Shown piece by piece: positions 7,137 to 46,500 of a DNA stretch of 64,000 bases. The translations under genes were made by a program, and so were the position numbers. Numbering within the stretch: position 1 is the stretch's first letter; each line of letters begins with the position of its first letter. The DNA comes from Selaginella moellendorffii. Lineage: Eukaryota; Plantae; Lycopodiophyta. The notes below the pieces were generated by a model. It was not told the origin of the DNA, ran no database searches, and saw only the letters and a program-made list of their open reading frames with translations. The stretch lies in NCBI RefSeq assembly GCF_000143415.4, contig NW_003314302.1, positions 1,181,820-1,245,819 of the forward strand, in the 5' to 3' direction.

Positions 7137-10100
7137 AAAAGCGCTAATTTTGAAATATTCAACTTTGGAGATCCAACGTGGACGCGCATTTAAAGAGAGG
7201 TGTGCCGTCCGATCGGCGTGGCAATGGCGATCAAGCCTAGGGCATTGGGAGGTTCGCTCGGAGAATTTTGCTCGCTACTGCATTAGATTAAGGCGGAGGT
7301 AAGTTAAGCGTGTTTCTTAATTGCCCTCTTTCTTTCTTTTCAAAAGAGAGGCGGATGACACACGAAATTGGACAACAAATGGCCACAGCAATCGTGTTAG
7401 CAATGGCTTTTTGTTTTATGTGTTTACAGGTTGACATGCCCAAGAGTAATAAGATAGATGCTGTTGTTGATGAGGTGGTGATTTGGATTGTGCTTTCAAG
7501 ACTTACAGTGTTATGTATGTGTTTTAGGTGAGGTAGAGCTAGTAGTTGATTCTCTCGTGTAAGGTCTTGTCTATTGTTCAAGAGTAGTGAAATGAACAAG
7601 AGAGTGAACCCTAGGCTAACCTCCCAACCCTTAAGGTGTTATGGCCTTAAATCCCACAGGAATAGAATATTCTCAAAATATTCCTGTGGTTCGTGTCATT
7701 TTCCCCTCCCTTATGACCTAACCACATACAATAGCATTGAGAAGCTAAACAAGCCTCACATAAAGGGAGTCCAAGGCAATACAACCATGAAGAAAAGATG
7801 TGCAAATGGCAATACCAATGTCGCGACAAATGGCCATGAAAGAAGGAAAGCAATTCGGCTTTCTCACATGACAATATGGTCATGGAAACAAGAGAATGAG
7901 AATAGAACAAACGGCTCAAATCATATAACAATACAGCTATAAAACTCAATTCTCCCCTTCCTCAAGAATATCATCCAAGTCATAACCAAAACTTGGAAAC
8001 ACTTTCTTCATGTCATCCTTAGTTTCCTATATAGCTTTGTCCATGGAATAACCATTCCATTGAACTAACAACTCCCTAGTTGTCTTCCGGCTTGTTCTCA
8101 CCAATCTTTGAGCAAGAATATTGGCCAGACCAGCCTTCTCTGCATCAATCTCTAGGATCTGGATGATGGATTAATACATGACATCACCAAAGTGCAAACA
8201 CGCTTTAAGCTTGCTCACTAGAATGTTGGATGAATCTTCGAACTAACTAGCAAGTCTAAAGTGTATGCAAGATCCCCTATATGCTGTAAAATTGTCCAAG
8301 GCCCACAATACCGTGAAGACAACTTAGCACTGCCACCTCCTTTTAGAGACCATTGTGCATCCAACAGCTTAAGGAAAATCTTGTCACCAACTTTGTGCTC
8401 TTGATGACGATGATCCTCATCAGCCAATCTTTTGTCTTGCTCTTGAGCTTGCCCCATGTTCAACTTTGCCAACTCAAGCTTGTTTTGCATATCCTCCAAG
8501 AAATCACAAGCATGAGGTACTCGAACCAAAGCCAAATTCAAACTCACTGGAGACTTAGGCTCATAGCCATACATTGCCATAAATGGAGACATGCCAATAG
8601 CTTATTGATGAGTGCTATTATGAGCAAACTGAAGCAAAGGCAAGTATTTTTCCCATACTCCCTGTCGAGTTAAGTTTCCCACAAAAGACCTTAGCATATC
8701 TTCTAAAAGCTAATTTATGCACTCTATCTGCTCATCAAATTGTGGATGCTCACCACTACTCATACTCAGCTTAGTCTCTAGCTTCTCAAAGACCACTTGC
8801 CAAAACTTAGACGTGAACTTGGGATCCTAATCACTCACAATGTCACCCGGCAAACCATAGAGGTTGAATAATTGGTCTACAAATGATTGAGCAAGTTCAA
8901 AAGCTTTTATAGTCATCTTCACGGGGAAGAAGTGAGCCATTTTCATCAAATGATCCACAACAACCCAAATAGCATCATTTCCTCGAAAGGTTTTGGGCAA
9001 ACCAGTGATAAGGTCTATCGAGATGCTATCCCACTTATTCTCGGGTACACATAAAAGATGTAGAGGCCAGTGAGCTTCTGATGATCAACTTTAACTGCCT
9101 AGCAGGTCAAACAACCATGTATGTACTTCTCAACATCTGACTTCATCCCAGGTCAAAAGAAATGCCTCTTCACCAACATATATGTTCTCAATACCCCTGG
9201 ATGCCCAACACTTGGCACATCGTGACACTCAACCAAAATCCATTTGATAAGTTTGTCAACACGAGGGACCACTATATGTCCCTTCTTCACTAGGATTCCA
9301 TCTCGTATCTCGAATGATGTAAACTTGTCACATTTTAAATCTGTGGAGGTGTCCCTCAACAAAACCTTCATACAAATATCAGTGATAAAGGAGTCGAAGT
9401 CAGCAAACTCTTTAAGCTCATCCAAGAGATTGTTGGATAGCTTCACGAATGAGATAGAATTTACCATCCTGGATAATGCATTAGCCACCTTATTGTCACT
9501 TCCATGCTTGTACCGAATCTTAACAAACATTTCCTATAGAAATTCTTGCCAACGAGCAAGATGGCTTTGAAGATCTACATTTGGAGAGACTAATGATTTG
9601 AATCTACATGGAAGTCCAATCCATATAGGTAATGTTGCCATTCTTGAATAGGTCAATTCCACTGTGTGGCATCAAAATTATGGCTTATGAATGCGATGGC
9701 TTATAAATGCAAGAGAATGCCTAACTTGAAACAATACGGCCCCAAAAGCACTATCACTTCACATCATTGCCTATAATTTCCACCATAGTCATCTTCAGAA
9801 CAATCCTTACTCTAATGTCCAGCCCTGTGGCAACGAAAACAATTGCCCTCCACCTTATTGTAAGCAACCAAAGGGAACGACTTGAGAGATGATCTATGGG
9901 GTTCAAATATAGAGGGAAAGGGCCCATAAACAAGAGTGCACCCCCTTTTCCAATCGGTTAAGGGTCTTGGGATATTTGGGGTTAAGCGTCCTTGGGTTTG
10001 AATAGTACTGGGCTGGGTGACTTCCCGGGAAGTCCAAACTCAGGAGCTTACAATTTGGTATCGGAGCCTCTTCCTCAGTTCTAGCGAAGGATAGAGGCAG

Positions 10101-10169
10101 ATTGCTGGGAGATGGCAAGGGCAGCCTCTTCCTTAGTTCTAGCGAAGGATAGAAGCGGATTGCTGGGAG

Positions 10170-13100
10170 ATGGCAAGGGCAAGACGTAAGCGTGATGAGA
10201 AGCGGAAGAAAAAGCGAAAGACTGCGGATGCTAGCAGTGCAGAGGGTGCGGACCCTTCGGTAGGGACTCGATTGGACGTTCTAGAAGGACAATTGGCACA
10301 AACCAATGCCCTACTAGAGACTCTCATACGCAAGTTAAAGCGTGACGAGAAGCGGAAGAAAAAGCGAAAGACTGCGGATGCTAGCAGTGCAGAGGGTGCG
10401 GACCCTTCGGTAGTGACTGAGGCAGAACCAAACAAAGTCGAATAGACCGAAGTGGAATCAGTCCCTCAGGCAGTTCCCAAGTACAAACCAAAGCCCCCAT
10501 CGGTCTTCAAGGGAGTGAATGACTATAAGGTGGTGGAGGATTGGTTTTATGATATGGAGGACTACTTCCGAGCATTGCGGTTACCAAGCTTGGAGAAGGT
10601 CCTATGTGCAAAACCATACTTGGCAGATAATGCCAAGTCTTGGTGGAGAATGACAGAGGCTAACGAAGGACCAGTGGCCACTTGGGAAATGATGAAGGTG
10701 AGGATCTGCGCGATTTACGTTCCTCCGAATGCTACTCTGCATCTAAGAGACGAGCTGAGTAGGCTGAAGCAGACCGGAAGCATTCAGGAGTATGTGAATG
10801 GGTTTATGGCAAAGAGGATACTTGTCACGGACATGGGGGATATGGATGCGTTCCATGCCTTCATATCAGGTTTGCAAACCTGGGCTCGCGGAGAGGTGAT
10901 GCGGTGGAACCCGACCAACTACAAGGAAGCGTTGGATGCAGCCATCAAGGTGCATTTCAACGATAACCTGTGAAAGGGGAACACGACGGGGTCGGGGTTC
11001 ACGTTTAGCAAAGGGGCCAAACCAAGGGGAACGTATAGCCGAGGGAAATTCAAGAAGAGTTTCTCTAAGAATGAGTCCTCGGGGTTCCGGAAAGGCAAAT
11101 CCGGTGGCCAGCGAGCGAGTACGTGGGGGAGTCAAGCGAAAAGAGACAAACCCACGGATAAGAAAGTCAAGTCGTATAGCAGCGTGGGAAACAACATATG
11201 CTACAACTGCGGTGAAGCGGGACACTTTTCGAGGGAATGTCCCTACCCGAAGAAGGCCAAAGCCAATATGGCCATCAAGTCGGGTGAAGTCCAAACTGAG
11301 GTATGTGATCCAGTCCCTAACTCAAAGTTACTCATTACACGAGCAACTTTGGTAGAGAGTCGTTCGCGACATCTACTAGCCCTCCGAGGGAAGCTCGGAG
11401 GTAGCTTTGTTAAGATCCTTATTGACATGGGTGCTTCGGATAATTTTGTGGCTGCAGACATAGTTCGGCATGCCGGACTAACGGTGCAGCGGCTAGGCGA
11501 ACCAAGGATTATAGAGTTTGTTTAAGGTAGCCAAAGCACCGATGAGGTACTTCGACAAGCGAGAGTCGGAGTGGGGACTTGGAAAGTGGACATGGATTTC
11601 ACCATGTTGGACATGGCGGGATTTGACGTGATCTTCGGAATGGATTGGTTCAATCGGTTTGTGGTAGCCTTGCATGGACAAGGTAGGAACCTTGTGGTAC
11701 TGGCAAATGCCCAAGGAAGAAGATCTAGGGTGGAGGCTCAGGATCTAAAGGTAGGGCAAAGCAAGGCCAAAGATTCCTGCTTAAACCTGGTGTCCACGAG
11801 AGGACAACTCACTAAAGGAACTAAGGCAGCCTTTTTGTGCTTACTCTCGGTAAAGAGTGACAAAAAGACAAGAACAGAAGAAGTGCCTTTAGTGATCCAG
11901 CGAGTGTTGGACCAATTCCAGGATACCATGCTGGAGGAGCTACCGGCGGGGTTGCCCCCAGCACGACCGATAGAACATAAGATTGAGCTGGTCGAGGGTG
12001 CTGAGGCAGTGGTTCATCCCCCTTATCGTTTGAATGAAAAGGAACTCAAGGAGCTCAAGTGCCAACTAAAGGAGTTGGTGGACAAAGGGTATGTTAGGTT
12101 GAGCAAGTCGCCATATGAGGCGCCGGTGCTATTTGTGAAAAAGAAAGATGGATCTATGCACATGTGCATAGACTATCGGTTGCTCAACAAGTATACAAAG
12201 AAGAACAAGTACCCTTTGTCAAGGATTGAGGACCTGTTCGATAGGTTGGGAAAGGCAAAATACTTCTCGAGGATTGACCTAAGGTCAGGATACTACCAGA
12301 TCAGGGTAGCCGAGGAAGATGTGAAGAAGACAACCTGTCGAACCAGGTATGGGAGCTTTGAGTTTCTAGTGATGCCCTTCGGGCTATGTAATGTGCCGGC
12401 AACGTTTTCAACGCTAATGAACCACATCTTTGTACCCTATCTGGATCACTTCGTGGTCGTCTATATCGATGACATCCTGATCTATAGCGAGACGCTAGAG
12501 GAGCATGCTGAACACTTGGCGAAGGTGTTTGAGAAACTAAGGGAACACAAACTGTATGCTAAAGAGAACAAATGTGACTTTGCTCAACAAGAGGTAAAGT
12601 TTCTCGGGCATGTGGTGGGCCAGAACGGGCTCAAGGTGGACCCGAAGAAGGTCCAAGTGATCTAGGAATGGGAGCGACCATCAAATGTACATGAGTTGAG
12701 GGCATTCTTGGGGCTATGTAACTACTACCGAAAGTTTATCAGACACTATTCGAGAGTAGCCCTGCCCTTAACGGACCAAACAGGAAAAGGGAAGATGGTA
12801 TGGACAGCAGAATGCGAGGTGGTATTCGTCCACCTCAAAGGGAAGTTGAGGAAGGCTCCCGTGTTGGCATTACCAGACTTTGGTAAGGACTTTGAGGTAG
12901 AAACGAATGCTTCGGACTTTGCGTTGGGTGCAGTTTTGAAGCAAGACAACCATCCAGTAGCATTCTTCTCGAAGAAGTTGGACAAGGCTCAAAGGAAGTG
13001 GCCTGCCCATGAGAAGGAATTGTTTGCAGTGGTCAAGGCGCTCAAGGAGTGGCGACACTACCTTGGGAGACACTTCAAGGTTTACATGGACAATGTGGCA

Positions 13101-14873
13101 ACGAAACACTTCTTGTCACAGCCCGACCTGAGAGGGAAACAGGGTCGGTGGGCCAATGCCTTGGCCGAGTTTGATTGTGAGATTTTGTACAAGCCCGGGA
13201 AGAGCAACATTGTGGCGGATGTGCTAAGTCGAAAAGCGAGCTTGAGGTTGGCGATATCCAGCATAACAGCAACCTTCTGGGACGATGTGTGGACAGCATA
13301 TAAGAACGATGGTCTAGCACAAGAAGTGTTGCTGAGGAATCTAGAGGCACGGGAAGCTCACCAGAGAGGTGAGCTGCCAACGGAAGAGAAAACGGGCTAT
13401 GCAGAACGCAACGGACTCATCTATTACAAGCAAACGAGGGTGTATGTTCCAGAAGGGGAACTAAGGAAGGTAGCCTTAGAAGAGTGTCATGACGGACCTC
13501 TTGCGGGACACGGCGGAGTGCCCAAGACGATGGGCTTACTCAAGAGGAAGTACCATTGGCCAGATATGGCTAAGGAAGTCCAAGACTATGTAAAGACATG
13601 TCCAACATGTCAGCAGGTCAAAGCCGTGACTAAGGCTAGTGGAGGCTTGTTGCAAAGCATCCCAATTCCAGATCGCCCGTGGAAATGTCTAACAATGGAC
13701 TTCATCACGGGACTCCCCCCAAGCGAGGGGTTTGATGCGATATTCGTGGTGGTGGACCGATTTTCAAAAATGGCACATTTCATACCCACCATAACGGAAG
13801 TGGATGTGGAAGGTGTGGCGAAGCTGTTCTTTGAACAAGTGGTGCGAGTGCGGGGAAGGCTGGAAGAGATCATCTCAGATCGAGATAAGATCTTCACTAG
13901 TAGGTTCTGGAGGACTCTCCTGGAATAGTATCGCACCAAGTTGAAATTCAACACAGCCTATCACCCACAAACAGGTATGGGGTATTAAGTCAAGTTTGGT
14001 GGCACTAACACTTCTTGACAGACGGACAAACGGAAAGGGTGAATAAGCAGCTGGAGGATTATTTGCGATGCTATGTCTCGGGAGACCAAACCGATTGGGT
14101 AAGTCATTTGGGACTTGCGGAAATGTGTTATAACAACTCACCACATTCGAGTATCGAGGTGAGTCTATGGGAAGTCATCAATGGGCGAGCTATTGAAGGT
14201 CCTGTGGAACTCGGCGTGGTCGAGTATCATGGAGAGCTACCCGCAGTGGAGGCATTCACGGCGGAAAGACTCAACATTTGGAATCTAGTGAGGGATTCCT
14301 TGGAACGGGCTCAATAAAGGCAAACCAAGTACGCGAACCAAAAGCGCCGGGATGTAGAGTTCCAAGCTGGGGAGAAGGTGTGGTTGAACACCAAGAACCT
14401 TAGGCTACCAAGTGGGATCAGCCGGAAGTTGACCCAAAGGTAAAAATGCATGTATTCCTGTAAATGAATTGATCTTGAGTTCCTTAAGCAGGTTCGTGGG
14501 GCCTTACGAGATTGAGGCACGAATCGGTAAAGTGGCTTACCGACTCCGACTTCCTCGAGAGATGGGGAAGATGCACCCAGTGTTCCATGTGAACTTACTC
14601 AAGCCGTACTTTGAGGATCCACTTCGCAAGGACCAAGTAAGACCTTTACCTGAGGTTATCCAAGGGGAAGAGGAATACAAAGTCGAGGCCATCCTCAATG
14701 CGCGCAAGAGCAAGCGACAAGGACGTAAGGTGAAAGAGTTCCATGTGAAGTGGAAAGGATTTCCACACTACGAAGCAACATGGGAACCGGAGGAGAACCT
14801 AGCGAATGCGTGAGATCTAGTGGAGGAATTTCTACAAGGCAGAACTCTATGTACTTATGCAAAGTTCAATTAA
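10170..14873 (+). pseudogene. Chromovirus gag-PR-RT-RH-IN-chromodomain polyprotein, copy A (premature stops, two introns in IN)
   Basis: CYNCGEAGHFSREC, D(M)GAS, MCIDYR, YIDD, ASDFALG, HDGPLAGHGG...CPTC, ISDRD, YHPQT|DGQTE, KLTQR|FVGPY, chromodomain YKVEAIL...VKWKG...TWEPEEN. Confidence 0.95.
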
Positions 14874-15275
14874 AAATATCAATTTGCAAAGTTGAGCAAT
14901 GGCATATGTTGGGACCCGAAGGCGCGCCGAAGGTAAGCTAATTAGCATGGGTTGGATAGGTCGACCAGACATAGGGCACTACGCCCGACTCCCCGCGGGG
15001 ATGTCGAATCCGTAGACGTATTTTACGGAGGTTGGGTTCGAGTCCCAACCCCCTAGTAAAGCAAGGCTGGGTTCAAGTCCGGACCCCATACTAGGGCATG
15101 GTGAGATGAGGGGTATAGGGACACTTATATTTCGTTGTCATGGGCTCTTGGCCAGGGAGGCTAACTTAGGCACACCACTAAGTGGGGGGATGCCCCTAGA
15201 GACATGGTCAACAAGTCGTAGGATAAAAAGAGACGTTCGATGTGGGCATCGAACTTCTTCTATGGGTGGTGGAGT

Positions 15276-16421
15276 TGTAAGGAACTGACTCCCCGAGATG
15301 TCGTAGACTAAAGGATCCCCGAAAGCTTGACCGAAATGACAAAGAGTTCATCGGATGTGACCGAGTCGAAGATCGAGTCCAAGACCGACTCTGAGACCGA
15401 GTTCGAGATAGAGTCCGGGAACGAGCCGAGGCCGAATCGGAGACCGAGATTGAGACCGAGTTCGGGACCGAGTTTGAGACGGAGTCCGAGATCCAAATCG
15501 GGTCCAAGACTGAGTCCGAGGTCGAGTCCGAAGTTGAGTCCAAGATCGGGTCCGAGATCGAGTCCGAGATCGAGTCCGAGACCGAATCCGAAGTCGGGTC
15601 CGAGATCGAGTCCGAGATCGAATCTGAGACTAAGTCCAAATACTAATACGGGTCAAGGGGTGAAAGCCCAAAGCATGTGTCTCCTAGGGGGGGGGGGGGC
15701 TGCAGGGGGTTCCAAAAGTATAGTAGGGATAGTGAGGTCTAGGAACCAGTCTTGAAGGAACTCTCCAGTGGTGCTTCCAAACTGACTTGAGGTTGAGACT
15801 GGGGCTGAGGGGCCTTGGGTGGGAGTGAGCATGGGCTTGGGTGGTGCCGGAGGGGCCACCCAGGGAAGTGCTCAAGAGCAGCTCCCACTCCTGAAAGGGA
15901 AACCGACTGCGGTGCTCCCGGCTCATGTGGAGTGGTGCCCCACTTGAGTACTTTGTGGCTCATTAGTCTTCGCCCTTCCTAGGGGCTTGGGCCTTCCCTT
16001 CGGGATGGGGGGTACCCATACCGGGCCATTAGGCGACGGTGTTTCGCCCCGATGCCCCGAAGCAAGTATTGCACCCAAGGCTTGGGATTTAGAGGGTCCC
16101 ATGATCAAGTCTTGCTGTACCAAGGGGTGTTAGGAACCTGGAGGCTTGGTGTGCTTGGCTGCTTGTGCCTGTGGGGAGTGTAGCCGAACCTTAAGTCCAG
16201 TCTAACCCAGGGAGGGGGATTGGGAGAGATTTGGGAATCCGTGGATGGAAGGCTAATGCTCCATTGCTCGTGCAGTGAGTAGTTGAAACCAAGTAGGACC
16301 AAGTAGGAGCTGGTACAATAGGCGAGAACCTTGGCGAGGGAACTTAGCACAAACCAAGGCAGTGTTGGTCGGATAGACGAGGTAAGCTAGCAAATTAGAA
16401 AGGAAAAATTTGTGGCTTACA
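15276..16421 (+). repeat. Chromovirus LTR (~1.15 kb) with a GAGTCC/GAGATC/GAGACC hexamer array
   Basis: TGTAAGGAAC...GGCTTACA, preceded by the PPT-like ATGGGTGGTGGAGT. Homologous to 42525-43682 and 48915-50046. Confidence 0.92.
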
Positions 16422-17674
16422 ATTTGGTATTGGAGCCGTCTTGAGTCTGACTCTGTTGGTTGGCTAAGGGAATCACACCACATGTTGATTGACATCTGGC
16501 TGGTCCAGTTTGCTCCCGCTGGGCTCGACCCGAGGGGTAGGGTGTTAAGAGAGCGGGGCTCTCAAGAGAGCCGTGGCTCTCAGCTTCCGTTCATGAGGGT
16601 GTGAACTTGCAGAGAAGCGTGGTGGATTGTAAGCAACCAAAGGGAACGACTTGAGAGATGATCCATGGGGTTTAAATATAGAGGGAAAGGGCCCATGAAC
16701 AAGAGTGCACCCCCTTTTCCAATCGGTTAAGAGTCTTGGGATATTTGGGGTTAAGTGTCCTTGGGTTTGAATAGTATTGGGCTGGGTGACTTCTCGAGAA
16801 GTCCAAACTCAGGAGCTTACACTTATCTTTCTCTCTTTGGTCCAAACAATGTCTTTTGGCCTTATTACCATCTTCACTCTTCGAATTACAACGAAACAAT
16901 AGTCGTTTCTTCCCCGAAGATGAAGTATTGGTGGGTTGGTCATCATGTTGACCACCTTAAAGACCATCCTTTTGACCAGAGTTAACCAAGTTGACCTACG
17001 GTTTGGGCGAAAAGATTTGAGCCTTAGTGATAGCATCAGTTAATGTTGCTGGAAAATCCTTCTTGACCTTTTATTGCACATCCACTGAGCTCAATCCTTT
17101 AATGAAACATTGCACCTTTAATAGCTCATTATAGGTGCCCGTGAGACTAAAGTAAAGATCATGGAACTTGTGGGCATACGCATTCAAAAACAAAGTCCTC
17201 TGCCGGATCTCTAACAGCTAGTTCACAAGATCAACCTCTTCAAACTTCTTGACAAACGAAGTGCGGAAAACCTTCATCAAATCAGTCCAAAAAGTCGGTT
17301 GTGGATTAGCTTTAATGTAATTCTTCCACCACAAAGAAGCATGACCCATAAGCTTCATCATAAAAAAATCAATATTTACCTTATCTTTACAAAGATTGTG
17401 AGACTAACAACTTTCCCACAATTTCAACCAAGAATCAACCTCCTAGCTATCACAAACATCTGGTGATGATTTCCATTCCATGATACCATAATCCTTGGCA
17501 TGCTTGACGTACCAATGGTAATCACGGACATGAGATTAATTCAACCCTTGAGGGTTCATGCGAAGCAAAAAATCCTTAATGAGATTAATGGAATCCTTAA
17601 CCTCCTTTATGTCGCTTTGAACCGCAGAAATCTGGCATTCTTGCCACACAACGACATCATCAAAAGTCTCTTTT

Positions 17675-20212: not shown

Positions 20213-21408
20213 GTGGATGTTTTTGATATTGGTATTAGAGATGTATTGATGCAAGAAAGCCCGAGTGTGTTTAGTAAGCACTATCCCATTGCGTATATAA
20301 GCCATACATTACAACCAGGGTAGGTGAACTACTTCAAGACAGAGAAGGGCAAGGTGTAGTATTTTAGTCGTTTTGTGGATTATCTTTCTGATTGCACGGC
20401 ACTGTTGTGAACATTGCTGAAGTCATCAACGTCATCTTTCATCTAGTCTCTGGATATTGATGGTCATTCGTGGATCTAAAAGAGTTGTTGACCACTCTTC
20501 TAGTTTTAGCATATCTTAACTACACTCAACCTTTTTATTTTGCATGTGGATGCTTTTTATAGTGGTCTTGGAGGTGTGTTGATGCATAAAAGCTTGAGTA
20601 TGCTTGGTGAGTGCCATCCCATTATGTATATAAGCCATACATTACAACCAGCGGAGGTGAACTACTCCAGAGAAGGAGTGTTTAGCAATAGTTTAGGGTT
20701 TTAAGAAACTTTATGCATATCTACATAGTTCTCGGACATTATTTGAAGATGTTCATGTTGCCATTACTTCATTATTGAAGTGAAAGAACTTGGTTGGTCG
20801 TACTTCTCGGTGGACTTTGAAACTTCAAATATATGATTTTGATATTGTTCATTGTCTTGGGAGTTCTATGGCTGATGTTGATACCCTTTTTCGAACTCCT
20901 CCATTCTCCACTCTCTTCTCATGTTTCTGACAAGCTTGATTTTCTAGCATCTATAGAGTTTTTAGATGAGGATTCTGTGTTGTCAGTGGTTGCCGTACTT
21001 GAAATTCAGTGTCCACAAGGTGCAGAGCAAGATCTACTTTCTCTTGATGAAGTTTGCGAGGCTCAAAAGACTGAGCCGTGGATTCAAAGGCTTCGAGATG
21101 GGTTTGAGAATCCTACATCACTTGCTGATGATTTGCCATTTTTATATTTATATTCTCAATATCACCTTGAAGACAGCCTTCTTTATTTTGTGGGGATGGA
21201 TACTAATGATCCTTTACAGTTAGTGGTACTTTCCATATTTATTCCACAGTTTCTCCATGCCTACCATGATTCTCTTGTTCTAGGCGGGCATATAGGACAT
21301 CGTTGTATGACCGAGAAGCTGCACAGGTCTTTTTTTGGCTGGAGATGCAACGTGATATTATCCGGTATATGTGTAATTGCGTTTGGTTCCAAGTTTGTAA
21401 TACTCCCC

Positions 21409-22001
21409 TGTAAGCAACCAAAGAGAACGACTTGAGAGACGATCCATGGGGTTCAAATATAGAGGGAAAGGGCCCATGAACAAGAGTGCACCCCCTTTTC
21501 CAATTGGTTAAGGGTCTTGGGATATTTGGGGTTAAGTGTCCTTGGGTTTGAATAGTACTGGGCTGGGTGACCTCCCGGGAAGTCCAAACTCAGGAGCTTA
21601 CATTTGGTATCAGAGCGGTCTCAAGTCCGACTCTGTTGGTTGGCTAAGGGAATCACACCACATGTTGATTGACATCTGGCTGGTCCAGTTTGCTCCCGCT
21701 GGGCTCGACCCAAGGGGTAGGGTGTCAAGAGAGCGGGGCTCTCGGGAGAGCTGCGGCTCTCAGCTTCCGTTCACGAGGGCGTGAACTTGCAGGGAAGCGT
21801 GGTGGATTGTAAGCAACCAAAGGGAACGACTTGAGAGACGATCCATGGGGTTCAAATATAGAGGGAAAGGGCCCATGAACAAGAGTGCACCCCCTTTTCC
21901 AATTGGTTAAGGGTCTTGGGATATTTGGGGTTAAGTGTCCTTGGGTTTGAATAGTACTGGGCTGGGTGACCTCCCGGGAAGTCCAAACTCAGGAGCTTAC
22001 A
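21409..22001 (+). mobile_element. Intact 593-bp TRIM of Cassandra type (5S rRNA-derived LTR segment)
   Basis: LTRs 21409-21602 and 21808-22001 (one mismatch seen). TSD TCCCC. PBS TGGTATCAGAGC (tRNA-iMet). PPT-like GGGAAGCGTGGTGGAT. LTR segment GTTAAGTGTCCTTGGGTTTGAATAGTACTGGGCTGGGTGACCTCCCGGGAAGTCC aligns to 5S rRNA box A/IE/box C. Confidence 0.93.
21531..21585 (+). promoter_or_regulatory. 5S-type RNA Pol III internal control region (A box-IE-C box) in the LTR; further copies at 9981-10035, 16750-16804 and 21930-21984
   Basis: Colinear with plant 5S GTTAAGCGTGCTTGGGCGAGAGTAGTACTAGGATGGGTGACCTCCTGGGAAGTCC (recalled consensus). Confidence 0.85.
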
Positions 22002-23899
22002 TCCCCTTCGTACCGCGAAAGGATGGTTCGAGTCAATTGCAGTTTCCTATCCATTTGAGTTAGTGGTGTTTGATCTTATGGGACCTTGTCCACGATCGAC
22101 TGCTGGCAATGAATATGTTATTATTGCTTCTGATTATTTGACTTGTTGGGTGGAAGTTGGTGCTCTTGCTAATGCCTCTGCAATTGCTGTTGGATATTTC
22201 CTCCTCAATTGAGTGGTGTTCCAACATTCTTGTTTGGAGCGGATTCTTTCGGATAATAGTCCCGTATTTATGGCTGAAGCATTTCATGTTTTGACGTCTC
22301 GGTTGAGGATATGCCATGCTTTCACAAGTGCTTACCATCCACAGTTAGACGGTTTAGTGAAATGGCTCGTTCGGACATTCAAAGGAATGATCACGAAGTA
22401 TATGAACTTTTAGCATTTGGATTTAAATGGTTATTTGCCGTCTCTTCGGTATGCATATGTCATAAGGGTGCAAAGTTCTGTTGGTGCTTCACCATATAAA
22501 CTTCTATATAGTCATAATCTAATATTACCAATGAAGCTGGGTTTACCTTCGCAATTACCACGAACTGCCGATACTAGGTTGTGGGATCAGTATTTGATGA
22601 GCACTCTTCCACATGTTCGAGCAGAGTCTATTAAACACTTAGGCCGCGTACAAGTGGGACAACAATGGCGCTATAGCTCCCATCATCGTCCACCTACAGA
22701 GTACAAAGTGGATAATTTGGTGTTAGTCTATTTTCCCTATCTTACAGTATATGGTTTATCTAAAGGGCTCTTTGCTCAATGGAAAGGACCGTATCGGGTA
22801 TTGCGGCAAGTTGGACCAAAAGTTTATGAGGTTTAACATGATATCCAACAGGCTAATCCTCTAGAAATTGTGCATATGCAGTGGTTGAAACACTTCATAT
22901 AAAGGGATCAGAAACAACCGATACCACCTATAGATCCACTGAGCCTCCTTTTGACGTTCCTCCAAATCCCAGCCCATCTACAAGAGAACTTTGATAGTCT
23001 TCCATTATTCCAAGAGGAGGGGATGATGTGAGGTCCAAGTGTACGGCTATGATGCTGTATATTAATATTAGCGTAGTGGAATTTTGGTAGCCGTCAGATT
23101 GGTTTCAATTTGGACCACTCACTTCTCTATATAAGCTAAGGTTTTTGGGCTAATTGATATGCACATTTTTTGTATTCCCTTTCCATATTTCATGCACTCA
23201 TACAGAATAAAATCATTTAAAATGAATTTTTTCAATGGATTAGCTATGTTAAGAAAAGTAAAATTTGAAGATAGAAGAATTATAATCAAACTTAGAAATT
23301 TGATATGGTTTTCAAATTTTATTATTTCTATTTTAAAGTGTATTTATATAAAATTTATATTATATAATAAAATATATAAATCAGATATAAATCTTTTATT
23401 TCAGAGGAAAAGTTCAAGTTCTTTTCTTTATGTCTAATTTAGGAGAAATATTTAATATTTATATTTTAATGGATGATAACTTCAAAGTTATTTAGAAAAA
23501 CTATATAACATAAATTTATGCTAAAAAAATTTTAAAATAACATATTTATAAATTTTTTTCTTTTCTGTTAAGACAAATAATAAATTAAAATTTATCTTAA
23601 AACATAGTTTTATAATATTTTGTGTAAATATATTTATAATTTATAGAAAATTTAAACACCAAGTAATTTTAATCTTTTTTTTATAATTTATATGAAGTTT
23701 GATTGGTTTAAATCCATGTAACTAGTCATATCATTATGATTTTATCCATTTATATTTTTAATTTAAATGATTTCTTGTGATTATACACTTAGTCAGCACT
23801 TGCAACCATGACTAGTTTATTCTTGAAAGAAGAGAAGATTAGAACTATTAAAATATTAAATAATAAAAAAGAAAAAATGAATTTATGTTGGATACCTTT

Positions 23900-26800: not shown

Positions 26801-27070
26801 GGGGTCCCGTGGGAGCTCACTATCTCGCGACCAAGCACAACGTGAAGTGTAGAAAAGCGCTAATTTTGAAATATTCAAATTTGGAGATCCAACGTGGATG
26901 CAATGTAAAGACCACTTCCCAGACCAGCGCGGCCGTTTGGCAATGGCGATCAATGCTAGGGCAGGGGGAGCTTTGATTGGAAGTTCGCTTGGAGAATTTT
27001 GCTTGCCATGGCATTAGATTAGTCAGAGGAAAGGTTGTTTCTTCGAAAGAGAGGCGAATGATACAGATGC
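23900..27070 (+). repeat. Segmental duplicate of ~4060-7360 (ROCK1/G6PD intergenic region plus G6PD)
   Basis: Shared AATATTCTACCTGACCGTTGAC, GCAAGACCATGATCTGC and G6PD introns; the match ends at AAAGAGAGGCG. Confidence 0.9.
24928..26850 (+). pseudogene. G6PD: G6PD pseudogene (unprocessed duplicate)
   Basis: Transit-peptide exon largely deleted. GASGD changed to GESGD. Deletion across the intron 2 acceptor. 8-bp deletion in EKPFGRD giving TGA. ~20-bp duplication near 26400. Stop region deleted. Confidence 0.92.
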
Positions 27071-31073: not shown

Positions 31074-31077
31074 TCTT

Positions 31078-40500: not shown

Positions 40501-43500
40501 CACCAATGCGTTTATGAGCATACCTTGAAGAAGCCTCCTCATAGACAAACCTATAGTACGGGTACCGACATCTCAACCTCAAACAACTAAGTTGGACATG
40601 ATTCACCATTATCAACTAAGGAGCAGGGCCACCAAAACCAAGTCAAGATCAGTGAGAGCTCATTACTCTCATAAAGTCTAATGAAATGCAAGGTGCAACT
40701 TGCCACTAAGTATAACGCTACAGAAGAAAGGCACAAGGGTCACCTTTCTACATCAACTCGAGATTCTATTCAACTCAATTGCTTTAACCCCAAAGGTTAG
40801 CATCCTTTTCGGTTTGTATTATAAAAACTACTTATTAAGGTTAAGTTAACCGAAGTCAACTCCAACCCCTTCATTGGTTTGTACTGACTTACAAAAATGG
40901 AATGGTTTTCAAACAAAGTGATCAACAAATTAACCATTGGAAAAATCTAAGAAAATTTGTGGAAATTTTTCCATCCTAGAGAAAGAATGACTCTCAGTCC
41001 AAGAATGCAAACTTTCAAGACTCAACTAACTTCCTCTTACTAACAACTTCACATAAATTCACTTCAACACAAATTCTCATGACCTAATAGCATGCTTAAT
41101 TATCAAACATCTTTGCCCATTTTTCTGATATCCAACACCGACATCCGCAAAAATGCAAAATAAACATTTAAGGCTTGATTATGAAGACCACATCTTTGGA
41201 TATCTATATTGCACTAACACTCTTCTTCAACCACCTTCAAGATCCAATGTGAAGTCAAAATACTAATAAAAAAAATGACATGAAAAATCAAGTTCTAAGG
41301 AAAATTCCTCATCACTTAAAACAATAATGCCACTTCCACTAATACAAGTGCTAACGATGTTAATGCCTTAACTACACACCTTCTCCATCCAACAATCTAC
41401 TTTTAGTGTTAATAGATCAACCGACAAGAAATAGCAAATGAATGCCATAACCCTTTCCACAACCTTATGGGCAAACCCTTAAGGAAAAAATGTACTAACT
41501 CAAATTTAGCATAATGGACCACAATTGAGAATCCAGTCAAAGTTACTATAATGTTACTACATGTAAGTAGACTAGCTTCACCATCAACCACTTTGGGGTT
41601 GATCATCATTAACCAAGCAATTTCGTAAACACATTTCTCATTATCACATGGATATTATAAAAGTATCACAATGACTTGATCATCCATTGAGCAACACTAC
41701 GAGCAATGCCCATGTTATTACTTTAAATGTTTATGTGAATATCAAGTGCTAACTCGATTTGATAAAATGCAACATAAATGCCACACTCCACTGATAGAGA
41801 TTTACAACACCCAATACTAGTAACTTTTGTTCACAATACGGACAAGCTCATGCCACTCTCTTTCTGACCAAACTCAAAACTAATCTAACACCAAGCTATT
41901 CAAAGAGCAATAGCAAAGTTCCCCGGAAAAAGAATTGAGCATTGTCTTCAATAGCAAGTCTAAACAAAATGGTATAACACTTTATGGTTATCCATTCCAC
42001 AACTCACCACTTGCAAAATTATCACTTCCAACATGCATCAAAGTAGGGACTCTTGATTGCATGATATGAATATGAGCAATGAATTAACATCTCATTGCAA
42101 ATCATCTCTCCAAGAAGAGAAGATAATTTATGTGTTTGATCTTTCGTCCCTGACAACTCTCTTTTCAGTCTCATCTTTGACCAAACCTCAAGCTTGCTTT
42201 CGCACTGCCTTTAGTCCAATCCAAGAAAAGTTTATGAGAGAGCATGGCAATGACTACTTGAACTAATGGACTATAATCTTGATTGGTTCACTTATAATCA
42301 TGCCTAGAAAAGATCCACTAGTGCCATGCTAAACAGCTATAGACTAGCTTATTTGCCACTCATAGCAAACCCAAGGGAGGTTTACTTTTACCTGGTAACC
42401 ATTGATAGGACAACATTAATCCTACCAACTCAAATTGTAACCTCGAGTTGTTAATGTACCTCACTTATGAGCCCAAGTGCAAACTCGTGCAAATGGAACA
42501 ACTCAGTCCATCCTATGAGCTCAATATAAGGAACCGACTCCCTGAGATATTGTAGGCTAAAGGATCCCCGAAAGCATGACCGAAATGACAAAAAGTTCAT
42601 CGGATGGGACCGAGTCGAAGATCGAGTCCAAGACCGACTCTGAGACCAAGTTCGAGATAGAGTTCAGGATCGAGCCCGAGGCCAAATCGGAGACCGAGTT
42701 CAAGATCAAGTTCGAGACAGTGTCCGAGATCCAAATCGGGTCTGAGACCGAGTCCGAGGTCGAGTCCGACATCAAGTCTGAGATCGGGTCCGAGATCGAG
42801 TTCGAGATCGAGTCCGAGACCGAGTCCGAAGTCAAGTCCGAGATCGAGTCCGAGTCCGAGATCGAGTTCAAGACTGAGTCCAAATACTAATACGGGTCAA
42901 GGGGTGAAAGCCCAAAGCATGTGTCTCCCAGGGCGGGGGGGGCGGGCTGCAGGGGGTTCCAAAAGTATAGTAGGGATAGTGAGGTCTAGGAACCAGTCTT
43001 GACGGAACTCTCCAGTGGTGCTTCCAAACCGACTTGAGGTTAAGACTGGGGCTGAGGGGCCTTGGGTGGGAGTGAGCATGGGCTTGGGTGGTGCCGAAGG
43101 GGCCACCTAGGGAAGTGCTCAAGAGCAACTCCCACTCCTGAAAGGGAAACTGACTGCGGTGCTCCCGACTCATGTGGAGTGGTGCCCCATTTGAATACCT
43201 TGTGGCTTATTGGTCCTCGCCCTTCCTAGGGGCTTGGGCCTTCCCTTCGGGATAGAAGTGGGGGGCGTAGAGGTACCCATACTGGGCCGTTAGGCCATGG
43301 TGTTTCGCCCCGATGTCCCGAAGCAAGTGTTGCACCCAAGACTTGGGATTTAGAGGGTCCCATGATCAAGTCTTGTTGTACCAAGGGGTGTTAGGAACCT
43401 GGAGGCTTGGTGTGCTTGGCTACTTGTGCCTATGGGGAGTGTAGCCAAACCTTAAGTCCAGTCTAACCCGGGGAGGGGGATTAAGAGGGATTTGGGAATC

Positions 43501-46500
43501 CGTGGATGGATGGCTAATGCTTCGTTGTTCGTGCAATGAGTAGTTGAAACTAAGTAGGACCAAGTAGGAGCTGGTACAATAGGTGGGAACCTTGGCAAGG
43601 GAACTTAGCACAAGCCAAGGTAGTGTTGGTCGGATAGACGAGGTAAGCTGGCAAATTGGAAAGGAAAAATTTGTGGTTTACAATTTGGTATTGGAGCCTT
43701 TTCCTCAATTCTAGCGAAGGATAGAGGCAGATTGCTGGGAGATGGCAAAGGCAAGGCGGAAACGAACCAAGGCGGAGATGGAACCTCCTCCAGAGCTAGA
43801 GCCTCCGGTCGAACAAGAGGCTATGGTTGAGGAATCCTTGCATGAGGAGGACTCTAGTGAGGAAACTTCCAAACAGGAGTCCGGTGGTGAGGTTCGGTCG
43901 TCCAAAGCTTGATTGGACATTCTAGAAGGACAATTAGCACAAACCAATGCCCTGCTAGAGACTCTCATACACAAGTTAAAGTGTGACGAGAAGCGGAAGA
44001 AAAAGCGAAAGACTGCGGATGCTGGCAGCGCAGAGGGTGCGGACCCTTTGGTAGGGACTGAGGCAGAACTAAACAAGGTCGAACAAACCGAAGTGGAATC
44101 AGTCCCTCAGGTAGTTCCCAAGCACAAACCAAAGCCCCCACCGGTCTTCAAGGGAGTGAATGATTATAAGGTGGTGGAGGATTGGTTTTACAATATGGAG
44201 GACTATTTCCGAGCGTTGCGGTTACCAAGCTCGGAAAAGGTCCCATGTGCAAAACCATACTTGGTAGATAATGCCAAGTCTTGGTGGAGAACGACAGAGG
44301 CCAACGAAGGACCGGTGGCCACTTGGGAAATGATGAAGGCGAGGATCCGTGCGACTTACATTCCTCCGAATGCTACTCTGCATCTAAGGGACGAGCTAAG
44401 TAGGCTGAAGAAAACCGGAACCATTCAGGAGTATGTAAATGGGTTTATGGCAAAGAGGATACTTGTCATGGATATGGGAGATATGGATGCGTTCCATGCC
44501 TTCATATTAGGTTTGCAAACCTGGGCTCGTGGTGAGGTGATGCGTTGGAACCCAACCAACTACAAGGAAGTGTTGGATGTGGCCATCAAGGTGCATTTCA
44601 ATGATAACCTGCGAAAGGGGTACACGATGGGGTTGGGGTCCACGTTTAGCAAAGGGGTCAAACCAAGGGGAACGTATAGCAGAGGGAAATTCAAGAAGAG
44701 TTTCTCTAAGAATGAGTCCTTGGGGTTCCGGAAAGGCAAATTCGGCGGCCAGCGAGCAAATACGTGGGGGAGTCAAGCAAAAAGAGACACACCTACAGAT
44801 AAGAAGGTCAAGTCGTATAGTAGCATGGGAAACAACGTATGCTACAATTGCGGTGAAGTGGGACACTTTTCGAGGGAATGTCCTTACCTGAAGAAAGCTA
44901 GAGCCAATATGGCCATCAAGTCGGGTGAAGTCCAAATTGAGGTATATGATCCAGTCCCTAACTCAAAGTTACTCATTACATGAGAAACTTTGGTAGAGAG
45001 TCGTTCGCGACATCTACTAGCCCTCCGAGGGAAGCTCGGAGGTAGCTTTGTTAAGATCCTTATTGACACGGGTGCTTCAGATAATTTTGTGGCTGCAAAC
45101 ATAGTCTGGCAAGCCGGACTAATGGTGTAGCGGCTAGGTGAACCAAGGACTATAGAGTTTGTTCAAGGTAGCCAAAGCACCGATGAGGTACTTCGACAAG
45201 CAAGAGTCGAAGTAGGGATATGGAAAATAGACATGGATGTCACCATGTTGGACATGGCGGGATTTGATGTGATCTTCGGAATGGATTGGTTCAATTGGTT
45301 CGTGGTAGCCGTGCATGGACAAGGTAGAAACCTTGTGGTACTAACAAATGCCCAAGGAAGAAGATCTAGGGTGGAGGCCCAGGATCTAAAGGTAGGGCAA
45401 AGCAAGGCCAAAGATTCCCACTTAAACCTGGTTTCCACGAGAGGACAACTCACTAAAGTAACTAAGGCAGTGTTTTTGTGCTTACTCTCGGTGAAGAGTG
45501 ATAAAAAGACAGGAATGGAAGAAGTACCTTTAGTGATCTAGCGGGTGTTAGACCAATTCCAGGATACCATGCCAGAGGAGCTACCAGCGGGGTTGCCCCC
45601 CGCACGACTGATAGAATATAAGATTGAGCTGGTTGAGGGTGCTGAGGTGGTGGTTCGTCCCCCTTATCATTTGAACGAAAAAGAACTCGAGGAGCTCAAG
45701 CACCAACTAAAGGAGTTGGTGGACAAAGGGTATGTTAGGTTGATCAAGTTGTCGTATGGGGCGCCAGTGTTATTTGTGAAAAAGAAAGATGGATCTATGC
45801 GCATGTGCATAGACTACCGGTTGCTCAACAAGTATACAAAGAAGAATAAGTACCTTTTGCCAAGGATTGAGGACCTGTTCGATAGGTTGGGAAAGGCAAA
45901 ATAGTTTTTGAGGATTGACTTGAGGTCAGGATACTACTAGAACAGGGTAGCAGAGGAAGATGTCGAGAAGACAACCTGTCTAACCAGGTATGGGAGCTTT
46001 GAGTTTCTGGTGATGCCCTTTGGGCTGTGCAATGCACCGGCAACTTTTTTGGCGTTGATGAACCATATCTTTGTACCCTATTTGGATCACTTTGTGGTTG
46101 TCTATATCGATGACATCTTGATCTATAGCGAGACACTAGAGGAGCATGCCGAACACTTGGCGAAGGTGTTTGAGAAACTAAGGAACACAAACTATATGCT
46201 AAAGAGAGCAAATGTGACTTTGCTCAACAAGAGGTAAAGTTTCTCAGGCATGTGGTGGGCCAAGACGGACTCAAGGTGGACCCGGAGAAGGTCCAAGCGA
46301 TCCAGGAATGGGAGCGACCATCGAATGTACATGAGTTGAGGGCGTTCTTGGGGCTATGCAACTACTACCGAAAGTTTATCAAACACTATTCGAGAGTAGC
46401 CCTGCCCTTAACGGACCAAACAGGAAAAGGGAAGATGGTATGGACAGCGGAATGCGAAGCGGCATTCATCCACCTCAAAGGGAAGTTGAGGACGGCTCCC

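What the first reader, a model, noticed from the sequence alone, without database searches (positions are those of the whole stretch)
9854..16826. Cassandra-type TRIM fused with a chromovirus in one insertion: candidate autonomous partner of a 5S-carrying TRIM
Seen: one TSD (CTTAT) brackets Cassandra-LTR / PBS / chromovirus gag-pol / PPT / chromovirus LTR / PBS / Cassandra internal / Cassandra-LTR. Both parents occur intact nearby (TRIM 21409-22001; chromovirus 42525-50046). The two outer LTRs share diagnostic bases (GAGAGAT, CAATCGG, TGACTTC) that the free TRIM lacks, so they look like sister LTRs. Both junctions fall at the shared CTTACA-(A)TTTGGTAT..GAGC LTR-end/PBS, and there is no internal TSD, so this is not ordinary nesting. 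Known: Cassandra TRIMs are non-autonomous, and I am not aware of an established helper (check the literature). Inference: template switching between co-packaged RNAs, or recombination of a 1-LTR circle at the PBS. Either implicates this chromovirus as the TRIM's helper and yields a gag-pol element flanked by 5S-promoter LTRs.
Basis: partly seen in the sequence, partly recalled or inferred. Interest (0 to 1): 0.93.

Follow-up and report, generated by a model that had tools for sequence, protein, structure and literature searches.

The report
Cassandra-like TRIM fused with a chromovirus
A tiny non-coding plant retrotransposon with 5S-rRNA-like repeats and a full-size (now broken) chromovirus sit fused inside one insertion, joined exactly at their tRNA primer-binding sites, which is circumstantial one-copy evidence that this chromovirus family may be the unknown helper of Cassandra elements.

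Summary
The described structure is real. One 5-bp duplication (CTTAT) brackets 9859-16821, which reads TRIM LTR / spacer+PBS / chromovirus gag-pol / PPT / complete chromovirus LTR / spacer+PBS / TRIM internal domain / TRIM LTR.

Corrections:
- The 5S likeness is real but below Rfam's gathering score.
- The "intact" chromovirus parent is not intact. It carries an extra upstream internal fragment, has no TSD, and has about 3 frameshifts and 10-12 stops.
- The composite's gag-pol is also broken, with about 2 frameshifts and 5-7 stops.
- The three "diagnostic bases" cannot prove sister LTRs. The TSD does that work.

New detail: both spacer+PBS copies are chromovirus-type. One breakpoint lies in the shared GCTTACA LTR end. 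The other is blunt, 1 nt past the PBS. A 58-bp duplication starts inside the PBS. This disfavours nesting-plus-deletion, a single crossover with a 1-LTR circle, and graph misassembly.

The best reading (about 0.5) is several template switches at the PBS during reverse transcription of co-packaged RNAs, followed by integration through the TRIM ends. That would make this a heterologous variant of the Sabot-Schulman complexes. The helper inference rests on one decayed copy. The chimera itself looks like a dead end.

The parts
9854..9858 (.). left target-site duplication CTTAT
   Evidence: identical to 16822-16826
9859..10052 (+). 5' TRIM (Cassandra-like) LTR, 194 bp, TGTAAGC...GCTTACA
   Evidence: 96-97% identical to the free TRIM LTRs
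9962..10049 (+). 5S-rRNA-like segment in the 5' TRIM LTR
   Evidence: RF00001 31.3 bits (gathering 38), E 1e-4
10046..10052 (+). junction 1 window: GCTTACA, the only bases shared by the TRIM LTR end and the chromovirus LTR end
   Evidence: last TRIM-specific base is 10045, first chromovirus-specific base is 10053
10053..10068 (+). spacer ATT + PBS + 1 nt, chromovirus-type (15/16 identical to 43683-43698)
10065..10180 (+). 58-bp tandem duplication (2 units, 3 transitions apart); its left boundary lies 4 nt inside the PBS; single-copy in the other chromovirus
10188..10418 (+). 81-bp segment present twice (10188-10268, 10338-10418); the first copy replaces about 154 nt found in the other copy (43754-43907)
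10112..14837 (+). chromovirus gag-pol (gag, zf-CCHC, protease, RT, RNase H, integrase, SH3_Tf2-1, chromodomain); broken: about 2 frameshifts and 5-7 in-frame stops
   Evidence: outer bounds only
15355..15646 (+). 12-nt tandem array in the chromovirus 3' non-coding region
   Evidence: also present in the other copy
15686..15700 (+). chromovirus polypurine tract (A followed by a G run)
15701..16421 (+). complete internal chromovirus LTR, 721 bp, TGCAGGGG...GGCTTACA; no 5S match
16422..16437 (+). second spacer ATT + PBS + 1 nt, chromovirus-type (16/16 identical to 43683-43698); junction 2 lies between 16437 and 16438 with no shared base
16438..16627 (+). TRIM internal domain, with its purine-rich tract at 16611-16626
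   Evidence: 178/190 identical to 21618-21807; all 12 differences are transitions, no indels
16628..16821 (+). 3' TRIM LTR
16731..16818 (+). 5S-rRNA-like segment in the 3' TRIM LTR (most decayed copy)
   Evidence: 23.6 bits, E 0.03
16822..16826 (.). right target-site duplication CTTAT
21404..22006 (+). comparator: free TRIM 21409-22001 (593 bp) with TSD TCCCC; spacer TT + PBS TGGTATCAGAGC; 5S-like segments at 21512-21599 and 21911-21998
42527..50046 (+). comparator: chromovirus copy. Partial internal 3' end + PPT (42527-42947), LTR 42948-43682, internal 43683-49312 (gag-pol about 43742-48483, about 3 frameshifts and 10-12 stops), LTR 49313-50046. No TSD

Best explanation
The composite is a heterologous complex cDNA. 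It was made in one round of reverse transcription from a TRIM RNA and a chromovirus RNA held in the same particle, then integrated once through the TRIM LTR ends.

Inferred path:
1. Minus-strand synthesis starts on the TRIM RNA, makes the normal first jump, and copies the TRIM U3, PPT and internal domain.
2. At the 3' edge of the TRIM's primer-occupied PBS it switches to the chromovirus RNA.
3. It copies that RNA's PBS, spacer and U5-R.
4. It jumps through the chromovirus R to the 3' end and copies the chromovirus U3, PPT and gag-pol.
5. Near the chromovirus 5' end it makes further small switches, seen as the 58-bp duplication and the 81-bp copy-back.
6. The TRIM plus-strand strong-stop DNA then pairs at the PBS and the GCTTACA end, which supplies the left TRIM LTR.
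7. Integrase acts on the two TRIM ends and makes the 5-bp duplication.

Shown: the architecture, the TSD, the positions and types of the junctions, and the decay state.
Inferred: every step of the path, the co-packaging, and therefore the helper role of this chromovirus family.

The product is a dead end rather than a new autonomous element.
For: 1. The composite meets all four criteria that Sabot and Schulman used for template-switch complexes: an internal LTR, two internal domains, a flanking TSD, and similar outer LTRs (PMC1950507; here).
2. Both spacer+PBS copies are chromovirus-type, 15/16 and 16/16 identical to the free chromovirus. Each differs from the free TRIM by one indel and one transversion. 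The 578 nt of TRIM-derived sequence differ from the free TRIM only by transitions. My count gives Fisher p of about 8e-4 that the PBS differences are ordinary decay of a TRIM-type PBS.
3. Three independent breakpoints cluster on a 23-nt stretch out of 7 kb. Junction 1 lies inside GCTTACA. Junction 2 is blunt, 1 nt past the PBS. The 58-bp duplication has its boundary 4 nt inside the PBS. The PBS is where strand transfer and pausing occur in reverse transcription.
4. The small duplications are as diverged as the outer LTR pair: 3/58 and 2/81 against 8/194. This fits one event.
5. The private branch of the internal chromovirus LTR is about 2.8%. The TRIM LTRs have 1.5-2.6% (computed). This fits equal residence time.
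6. The LTR termini are alike, GCTTACA at the 3' end and TGTA at the 5' end.
7. The only other copy of this chromovirus family in the window also has an LTR flanked by internal domains on both sides.
Against: - There is one copy only, and it is decayed.
- The true parents are unknown. The argument uses the single free TRIM and single free chromovirus as proxies.
- The TRIM internal domain and the chromovirus 5' UTR share nothing beyond the PBS. No common packaging signal is visible.
- The chromovirus-type spacer at junction 1 needs an extra assumption, namely heteroduplex resolution or a TRIM parent with ATT.
- The T-to-C switch at junction 2 has no microhomology.
- The iMet-type PBS is common among plant LTR retrotransposons (general knowledge), so it is not specific to this pair.
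- No other chimeric copy, read-level support or source genome could be retrieved.
Confidence: 0.5

Rival explanations
1. Acquisition at the DNA level after integration. A resident TRIM at the CTTAT site suffered a break at its PBS and was repaired by copying from a chromovirus template that offers LTR-spacer-PBS on both sides, either a tandem copy or an extrachromosomal circle. Alternatively a 1-LTR circle recombined at the short shared motif and mismatch correction followed. No co-packaging and no helper relation is implied.
For: - The TSD and outer LTRs are equally well explained.
- A tandem-like chromovirus template exists 26 kb away in the same window.
- Junction 1 lies in 7 nt of microhomology and junction 2 is blunt. 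This looks like microhomology-primed copying plus end joining.
Against: - A single reciprocal crossover predicts one TRIM-type PBS, and none is present.
- The shared stretch is only 16-23 nt with mismatches, and 6.4 kb would have to be copied.
- A circle or broken end would far more readily use the kilobases of homology in other chromovirus copies.
- It does not explain the 58-bp duplication boundary inside the PBS.
Confidence: 0.2
2. Ordinary nesting followed by deletion. A complete chromovirus inserted into the TRIM at the LTR/PBS boundary and later lost its 5' LTR through recombination between the short GCTTACA repeats.
For: GCTTACA is shared by both LTR ends, so such a deletion is conceivable. 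Illegitimate recombination is common in plant LTR elements (cited in PMC1950507).
Against: - The sequence after the chromovirus 3' LTR would then be the TRIM's own spacer+PBS. It is chromovirus-type, with one indel and one transversion against the free TRIM in a background of transitions only.
- There is no TSD around the chromovirus block.
- It needs an insertion within a few bases of one point in a 593-bp element, in the same orientation, plus an exact deletion.
Confidence: 0.04
3. Assembly artefact. A real TRIM at this site was wrongly threaded through a chromovirus 'internal + LTR' cycle in an assembly graph at the shared PBS.
For: The window comes from a scaffolded assembly with N gaps at 17940-18383 and 19413-20212. 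An 'internal + one LTR' loop entered and left at a shared node is the shape such an error would take.
Against: - The two PBS copies differ from each other. The longest exact shared string is 16 nt.
- Junction 2 has no shared base at all between the proxy parents.
- The two TRIM LTRs differ at 8 sites, and the chromovirus part is 6-7% from the other copy. Copies were therefore resolved, not collapsed.
- All differences look like in-genome transition decay.
Confidence: 0.06
4. The composite is one copy of a propagating chimeric family, that is, a gag-pol element that transposes with Cassandra-type LTRs.
For: The structure has matching TRIM ends, a PBS next to the 5' LTR and a PPT next to the 3' LTR.
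Against: - No second copy is in the window.
- Ten runs of four or more T lie between the 5S-like start in the 5' LTR and the 3' LTR, against one in the free TRIM. A full-length Pol III transcript is therefore unlikely (general knowledge of Pol III termination).
- The retained internal chromovirus LTR and second PBS are not what a streamlined family would carry.
Confidence: 0.05

Closest known systems
Template-switching complex LTR retrotransposon insertions (Sabot and Schulman 2007, PMC1950507)
   Same: Three LTRs, two internal domains, one flanking 5-bp TSD, similar outer LTRs. These are explained there by strand switching between two co-packaged RNAs.
   Different: The published cases are homologous pairs (Angela, Squiq, Opie). 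The switch is proposed in R, and chimeric LTRs are expected. Here the partners are unrelated in sequence (TRIM and chromovirus), no LTR is chimeric, and the joins are at the PBS.
Cassandra TRIMs (Kalendar et al. 2008; Maiwald et al. 2024, PMC10853983; Kalendar et al. 2020, PMC7215508)
   Same: 593-bp non-coding element with roughly 200-bp LTRs and a Met-type PBS. A 5S-like core of about 70-90 nt lies in each LTR, and the TSD is 5 bp. The size matches the smallest Cassandras described (about 600 bp with 200-bp LTRs).
   Different: The 5S match is below Rfam's gathering score and lacks about 32 nt of the model. Pol III transcription is untested. Known Cassandra rearrangements are tandem arrays and exchanges between Cassandras. 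I found no report of fusion with an autonomous element.
Chimeric or hybrid non-autonomous LTR elements and tandemly arranged TRIMs (sugar beet, PMC13570524; Gao et al. 2016, PMC4717578; pear Cassandra, PMC4079214)
   Same: LTRs and internal regions are reshuffled between families. Three-LTR structures often retain their TSDs.
   Different: Those cases involve non-autonomous families with each other, or LTR-LTR recombination within a family. None pairs a Cassandra-type TRIM with a coding chromovirus.
LTR swapping between autonomous and non-autonomous partners in soybean (Du et al. 2010, listed in the references of PMC4079214; paper not held, details from my own knowledge), plus BARE-2 and Veju_L, which PMC1950507 names as template-switch products
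   Same: Exchange of modules between a helper and its parasite is read as a footprint of co-packaging.
   Different: In those pairs the partners share long LTR or internal homology. Here they share only GCTTACA and the PBS.

Membership tests
Cassandra TRIM | Small non-coding LTR element (about 0.56-0.97 kb) with two short LTRs | tested here: met
   Free copy 21409-22001 is 593 bp with 194-bp LTRs that are 193/194 identical, and has TSD TCCCC. The size range is from PMC10853983.
Cassandra TRIM | 5S rRNA-derived segment, including the internal control region, in each LTR | tested here: inconclusive
   RF00001 matches all four LTRs at the same place, at 33.8, 33.8, 31.3 and 23.6 bits. All are below the gathering score of 38. 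E-values are 5e-5 to 0.03 in local searches, and 40 model positions are replaced by 8 nt. Nothing is found at gathering threshold. The boxes were not checked against this species' own 5S gene, which is not in the window.
Cassandra TRIM | Methionine-tRNA primer-binding site next to the 5' LTR | not testable with these tools
   TGGTATCAGAGC follows the free TRIM's 5' LTR after a TT spacer. That this is the Met-type PBS is general knowledge and is stated for Cassandra in PMC10853983. There is no tRNA gene in the window to pair it with.
Cassandra TRIM | Pol III transcription starting in the 5S part, with a T-run terminator in the LTR | not testable with these tools
   One run of four T lies in each TRIM LTR, 13 nt upstream of the Rfam-defined 5S start. 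It is the only such run between the two 5S-like starts of the free TRIM. Expression was not tested.
Chromovirus (Ty3/gypsy with chromodomain) | gag, protease, RT, RNase H, integrase order with a C-terminal chromodomain | tested here: met
   Pfam finds Retrotrans_gag, zf-CCHC, RVP_2, RVT_1, RT_RNaseH, Integrase_H2C2, rve, SH3_Tf2-1 and Chromo (E 1.7e-14) in that order on separate ORF pieces. The clade (Tekay, Reina, CRM or Galadriel) was not determined.
Template-switching complex (Sabot and Schulman criteria) | Internal LTR between two internal domains | tested here: met
   LTR 15701-16421 lies between the chromovirus internal region and the TRIM internal domain.
Template-switching complex (Sabot and Schulman criteria) | Flanking TSD around the whole complex | tested here: met
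   CTTAT on both sides.
Template-switching complex (Sabot and Schulman criteria) | Outer LTRs derived from one reverse-transcription event (highly similar to each other) | tested here: inconclusive
   The outer LTRs are 186/194 identical and all differences are transitions. They are no closer to each other than to the free TRIM LTRs (185-188/194). This fits an older insertion from a slowly changing master, but similarity alone does not show it.
Simple nested insertion | Inner element with two LTRs and its own TSD inside the outer element | tested here: not met
   There is one chromovirus LTR only. TTACA to the left of the block and GTCTT to its right are not a duplication. The PBS after the chromovirus LTR is chromovirus-type.

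The most novel reading that the evidence does not exclude
The composite is a fossil of a virus-like particle that held a Cassandra-type TRIM RNA together with a chromovirus RNA. Its product was integrated through the TRIM's LTR ends. This would be the first sequence-level pointer to the autonomous partner of Cassandra elements, namely a chromovirus family that shares the LTR terminus GCTTACA and the PBS. That partner has been unknown since 2008.
Probability: 0.4. Interest if true: 0.8.

Novelty: new variant of a known kind. Interest (0 to 1): 0.6.

Why it matters
Cassandra elements occur across vascular plants. They carry a 5S-derived Pol III promoter and have no coding capacity. The literature I could read still calls their helper unknown (PMC10886601, PMC7215508).

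A TSD-bracketed chimera whose joins sit at the primer-binding site is the kind of footprint expected from co-packaging. It turns the open question into a concrete census that can be run on any genome: do TRIM/chromovirus junctions of this type recur, and do they recur with this family only?

The finding also extends the template-switch model of complex insertions. That model was described for near-identical partners switching in R. Here the partners are unrelated and the switch is at the PBS.

On its own, a single decayed copy in an unidentified genome does not establish the partnership.

Tried and rejected
1. Other copies or the source genome:
- The RNase H-integrase piece has no relative above 49% identity among 5.8 billion clustered proteins or among the 1.84 billion representatives.
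- Exact-product look-ups for three window ORFs found nothing.
- Two metagenome scans were run. The TRIM LTR 3' end as a 23-mer gave nothing. A 20-mer of the 5S-like core gave two contigs, L001 and L002, that are unrelated beyond the seed.
- Recurrence, read support and species therefore could not be tested.

2. Flank continuity across the composite:
- The left flank is the RNase H-integrase part of an older minus-strand gypsy element (8006-9758).
- The right flank gives only non-significant matches, so continuity was not shown.
- The same test worked cleanly for the free TRIM.

3. Shared sequence between TRIM and chromovirus beyond the PBS:
- There is none between the TRIM internal domain and the chromovirus 5' UTR, 3' end or LTR.
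- There is a marginal LTR-LTR similarity, reached by about 2-6 of 500 dinucleotide shuffles. Rfam does not support it. I set it aside as unproven.

4. Other iMet-type PBS in the window that could show how specific the motif is: there are only the TRIM and chromovirus ones, plus chance-level hits.

5. Sisterhood of the outer LTRs from shared bases: rejected as uninformative.

6. Species identification through the G6PD-like ORF: not run. The length window of the protein search would exclude full-length G6PD, and the answer would not change the verdict.

7. Papers not held: Kalendar 2008, Maiwald 2021 and Du 2010.

SLIPS
- I also once noted the end coordinate of one reading frame inside the element.
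- The 5S claim rests on Rfam only.
- The PBS pattern searched was copied from window 21605-21616.

Full report
**1. What is there**

- The sequence between 9859 and 16821 is bracketed by CTTAT at 9854-9858 and 16822-16826.
- Its two ends are 194-bp TG..CA repeats (9859-10052, 16628-16821). They match the LTRs of a small element at 21409-22001 at 95-97%.
- That small element is a clean TRIM:
  - It is 593 bp, its LTRs are 193/194 identical, and its TSD is TCCCC.
  - After the 5' LTR come a TT spacer and then TGGTATCAGAGC. A purine-rich tract precedes the 3' LTR.
  - It sits in the integrase gene of an older plus-strand gypsy element. Reference-protein coordinates run on without a gap across the insertion.
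- Between the composite's TRIM LTRs, in order, lie:
  - a spacer+PBS;
  - a chromovirus internal region;
  - a G-run polypurine tract;
  - one complete chromovirus LTR (15701-16421);
  - a second spacer+PBS;
  - the full TRIM internal domain (16438-16627; 178/190 identical to the free copy, no indels).
  These are shown.

**2. Identity of the two partners**

- Rfam finds nothing in the window at gathering threshold.
- In local searches RF00001 (5S rRNA) hits the same place in all four TRIM LTRs, at 33.8, 33.8, 31.3 and 23.6 bits against a gathering score of 38. About 32 nt are missing from the middle of the model.
- Taken with its size, LTR length and PBS, the element fits the small end of the Cassandra lineage. 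Maiwald et al. describe elements of about 600 bp with roughly 200-bp LTRs and a shared 5S core of about 70 bp (PMC10853983).
- I therefore call it Cassandra-like. The 5S criterion is met in kind but not at the curated threshold.
- The coding partner is a Ty3/gypsy chromovirus. Pfam finds gag, zf-CCHC, protease, RT, RNase H, integrase (H2C2, rve), SH3_Tf2-1 and a chromodomain, in that order.
- Its closest relatives in two very large protein collections are at most 49% identical. The source genome is evidently not represented there.

**3. State of the genes**

I aligned twelve full-length relatives to each copy and kept only counts and outer bounds.

| Copy | gag-pol bounds | Frameshifts | In-frame stops |
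|---|---|---|---|
| Composite | about 10112-14837 | about 2 | 5-7 |
| Second copy | about 43742-48483 | about 3 | 10-12 |

Neither copy is autonomous as it stands.

**4. The second chromovirus copy is not a simple intact parent**

- The two-LTR element is 42948-50046, and its LTRs are 91% identical.
- Directly upstream of its 5' LTR lies another 3' end of an internal domain with its own PPT (42527-42947). This fragment is cut off abruptly on the left.
- There is no TSD.
- Both copies of this family in the window therefore have an LTR flanked by internal domains on both sides.

**5. The junctions**

- The TRIM LTR and the chromovirus LTR share only their last seven bases, GCTTACA.
- Junction 1: the last TRIM-specific base is 10045 and the first chromovirus-specific base is 10053. 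The break lies inside the shared heptamer.
- Junction 2: 16437 is chromovirus-specific and 16438 starts the TRIM internal domain. The join is blunt and sits one base past the 12-nt PBS.
- Both spacer+PBS copies (10053-10068 and 16422-16437) are chromovirus-type: ATT spacer, G at PBS position 8, and C after GAGC. They match the free chromovirus at 15/16 and 16/16.
- Against the free TRIM, each copy shows one indel and one transversion.
- The 578 nt of TRIM-derived sequence in the composite differ from the free TRIM by transitions only, with no transversion or indel. By my count, two non-transition differences in 17 nt against none in 578 nt gives p of about 8e-4. The PBS copies are therefore not decayed TRIM PBSs.
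- The TRIM's own spacer+PBS has been replaced, and the chromovirus motif is present twice.

**6. Other rearrangements at the same spot**

- A 58-bp tandem duplication (10065-10180) has its left boundary 4 nt inside the junction-1 PBS.
- An 81-bp segment is present twice (10188-10268, 10338-10418). The first copy replaces about 154 nt present in the other chromovirus copy.
- The repeat units are diverged by 3/58 and 2/81. This is indistinguishable from the 8/194 between the outer TRIM LTRs.

**7. Ages**

- The outer TRIM LTRs differ by 8 transitions (K2P 0.043). The free TRIM LTRs differ by 1.
- In a three-lineage comparison, the internal chromovirus LTR has a private branch of about 2.8%. The two TRIM LTRs have 1.5% and 2.6%.
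- This is compatible with the two parts having resided here equally long.
- The outer LTRs are no closer to each other than to the free TRIM (6-9 differences). With only three lineages, the three bases they share against the free TRIM are simply changes on one branch. They do not show sisterhood. The TSD is what ties the two ends to one insertion.

**8. Explanations**

- *Nesting plus deletion* predicts the TRIM's own PBS after the chromovirus LTR. *A single reciprocal crossover with a 1-LTR circle* predicts one TRIM-type and one chromovirus-type PBS. Neither is seen.
- *Graph misassembly* needs a shared k-mer across each join. The longest exact shared string is 16 nt, and junction 2 shares none. 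The copies are also clearly resolved from one another.
- *Break repair* by copying from a tandem or circular chromovirus template remains possible. It needs 6.4 kb of synthesis primed on 7 nt, and it does not explain the duplication boundary inside the PBS.
- *Reverse transcription* explains all three PBS-centred breakpoints.
  - The PBS is where the primer tRNA sits, where minus-strand synthesis ends, and where the plus-strand transfer pairs.
  - The composite meets the four criteria of Sabot and Schulman's template-switch complexes (PMC1950507).
  - It differs from those complexes in three ways: the partners are unrelated, the switch is at the PBS rather than in R, and no LTR is chimeric.
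- I put the RNA-level origin at about 0.5, DNA-level acquisition at 0.2, and the other readings at 0.04-0.06 each.

**9. What follows for the helper question**

- If the RNA-level origin is right, a TRIM RNA and a chromovirus RNA were in one particle. A cDNA with TRIM ends was then integrated. That points to this chromovirus family, or a close relative supplying the proteins, as a helper.
- The like termini agree with this: GCTTACA at the 3' end, TGTA at the 5' end, and the PBS. They are not independent evidence, because any microhomology-based route would select for them.
- No common sequence beyond the PBS is visible between the TRIM internal domain and the chromovirus leader.
- The literature I could read names no helper for Cassandra (PMC10886601; PMC7215508). 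It describes hybrid non-autonomous elements and tandem TRIMs, but no Cassandra-chromovirus chimera.

**10. The chimera itself**

- A Pol III transcript starting in the 5' TRIM LTR would meet ten runs of four or more T before the 3' LTR. The free TRIM has one, located in its 3' LTR.
- The element keeps an internal LTR and a second PBS, and it is broken.
- I read it as a dead-end by-product, not as a new autonomous family.

**11. Limits**

- There is one copy in one window of a scaffolded assembly with N gaps at 17940-18383 and 19413-20212.
- The parents are known only by proxy.
- Recurrence, read support and species could not be tested.

They were not used.

Noticed in passing
window 42527-42947: A 3' end of a chromovirus internal domain, with the 12-nt array and PPT, sits directly upstream of the 5' LTR of the second chromovirus copy and is cut off abruptly on its left. 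The structure is a truncated tandem (internal-LTR-internal-LTR) without a TSD. The fragment is about 10% diverged from both other copies of that region.
   Followed up: partly
window 20534-22932: The free TRIM is inserted in the integrase gene of an older plus-strand Ty3/gypsy element. Reference-protein coordinates continue across the insertion, about residue 1106 on the left and 1108 on the right in P0027.
   Followed up: yes
window 8006-9758 (minus strand): A degenerate RNase H-integrase-SH3 region of another gypsy element abuts the left flank of the composite. Both TRIM-ended insertions in the window therefore lie in old gypsy pol sequence. The right flank (16827-17670) could not be assigned.
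   Followed up: partly
window 18384-20669: A tandem array with a period of about 335 bp (copies 84-97% alike) is interrupted by the two N gaps (17940-18383, 19413-20212). By eye it looks like repeated RNase H-region sequence of the gypsy element that hosts the free TRIM.
   Followed up: no
window 5171-7303 and 24926-27033: A 2.1-kb segment is present twice at 90% identity. The first copy contains a 160-aa ORF (6373-6855) with two stretches of the G6PD C-terminal domain. It may be a captured or retro-copied gene fragment.
   Followed up: no
window 9977-10019 vs 15800-15843: There is a marginal local similarity between the 5S-like part of the TRIM LTR (LTR positions 119-161) and chromovirus LTR positions 100-143. 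It was reached by 2-6 of 500 dinucleotide shuffles. Rfam finds no 5S match in the chromovirus LTR.
   Followed up: partly
window 29565-31075 and 35789-36035 (minus strand): Fragments of a more diverged, AT-richer relative of the same chromovirus lineage: an LTR 72-75% identical and internal pieces 73-79% identical. Its LTR ends in ..ATTACA.
   Followed up: partly
window 15355-15646, 42600-42880, 48990-49255: All copies of the chromovirus carry a variable 12-nt tandem array between the chromodomain and the PPT. Copy number differs between copies.
   Followed up: no
window 3438-3770 (minus strand): A short ORF matches a nucleotide-sugar transporter domain (E 1e-7). It may be an exon of a host gene.
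   Followed up: no
L001 997-1016, L002 386-405: Two JGI metagenome contigs share a 20-mer of the 5S-like core plus a few flanking bases, but are otherwise unrelated to the TRIM. They resemble each other and may carry a 5S-derived repeat of another eukaryote.
   Followed up: no
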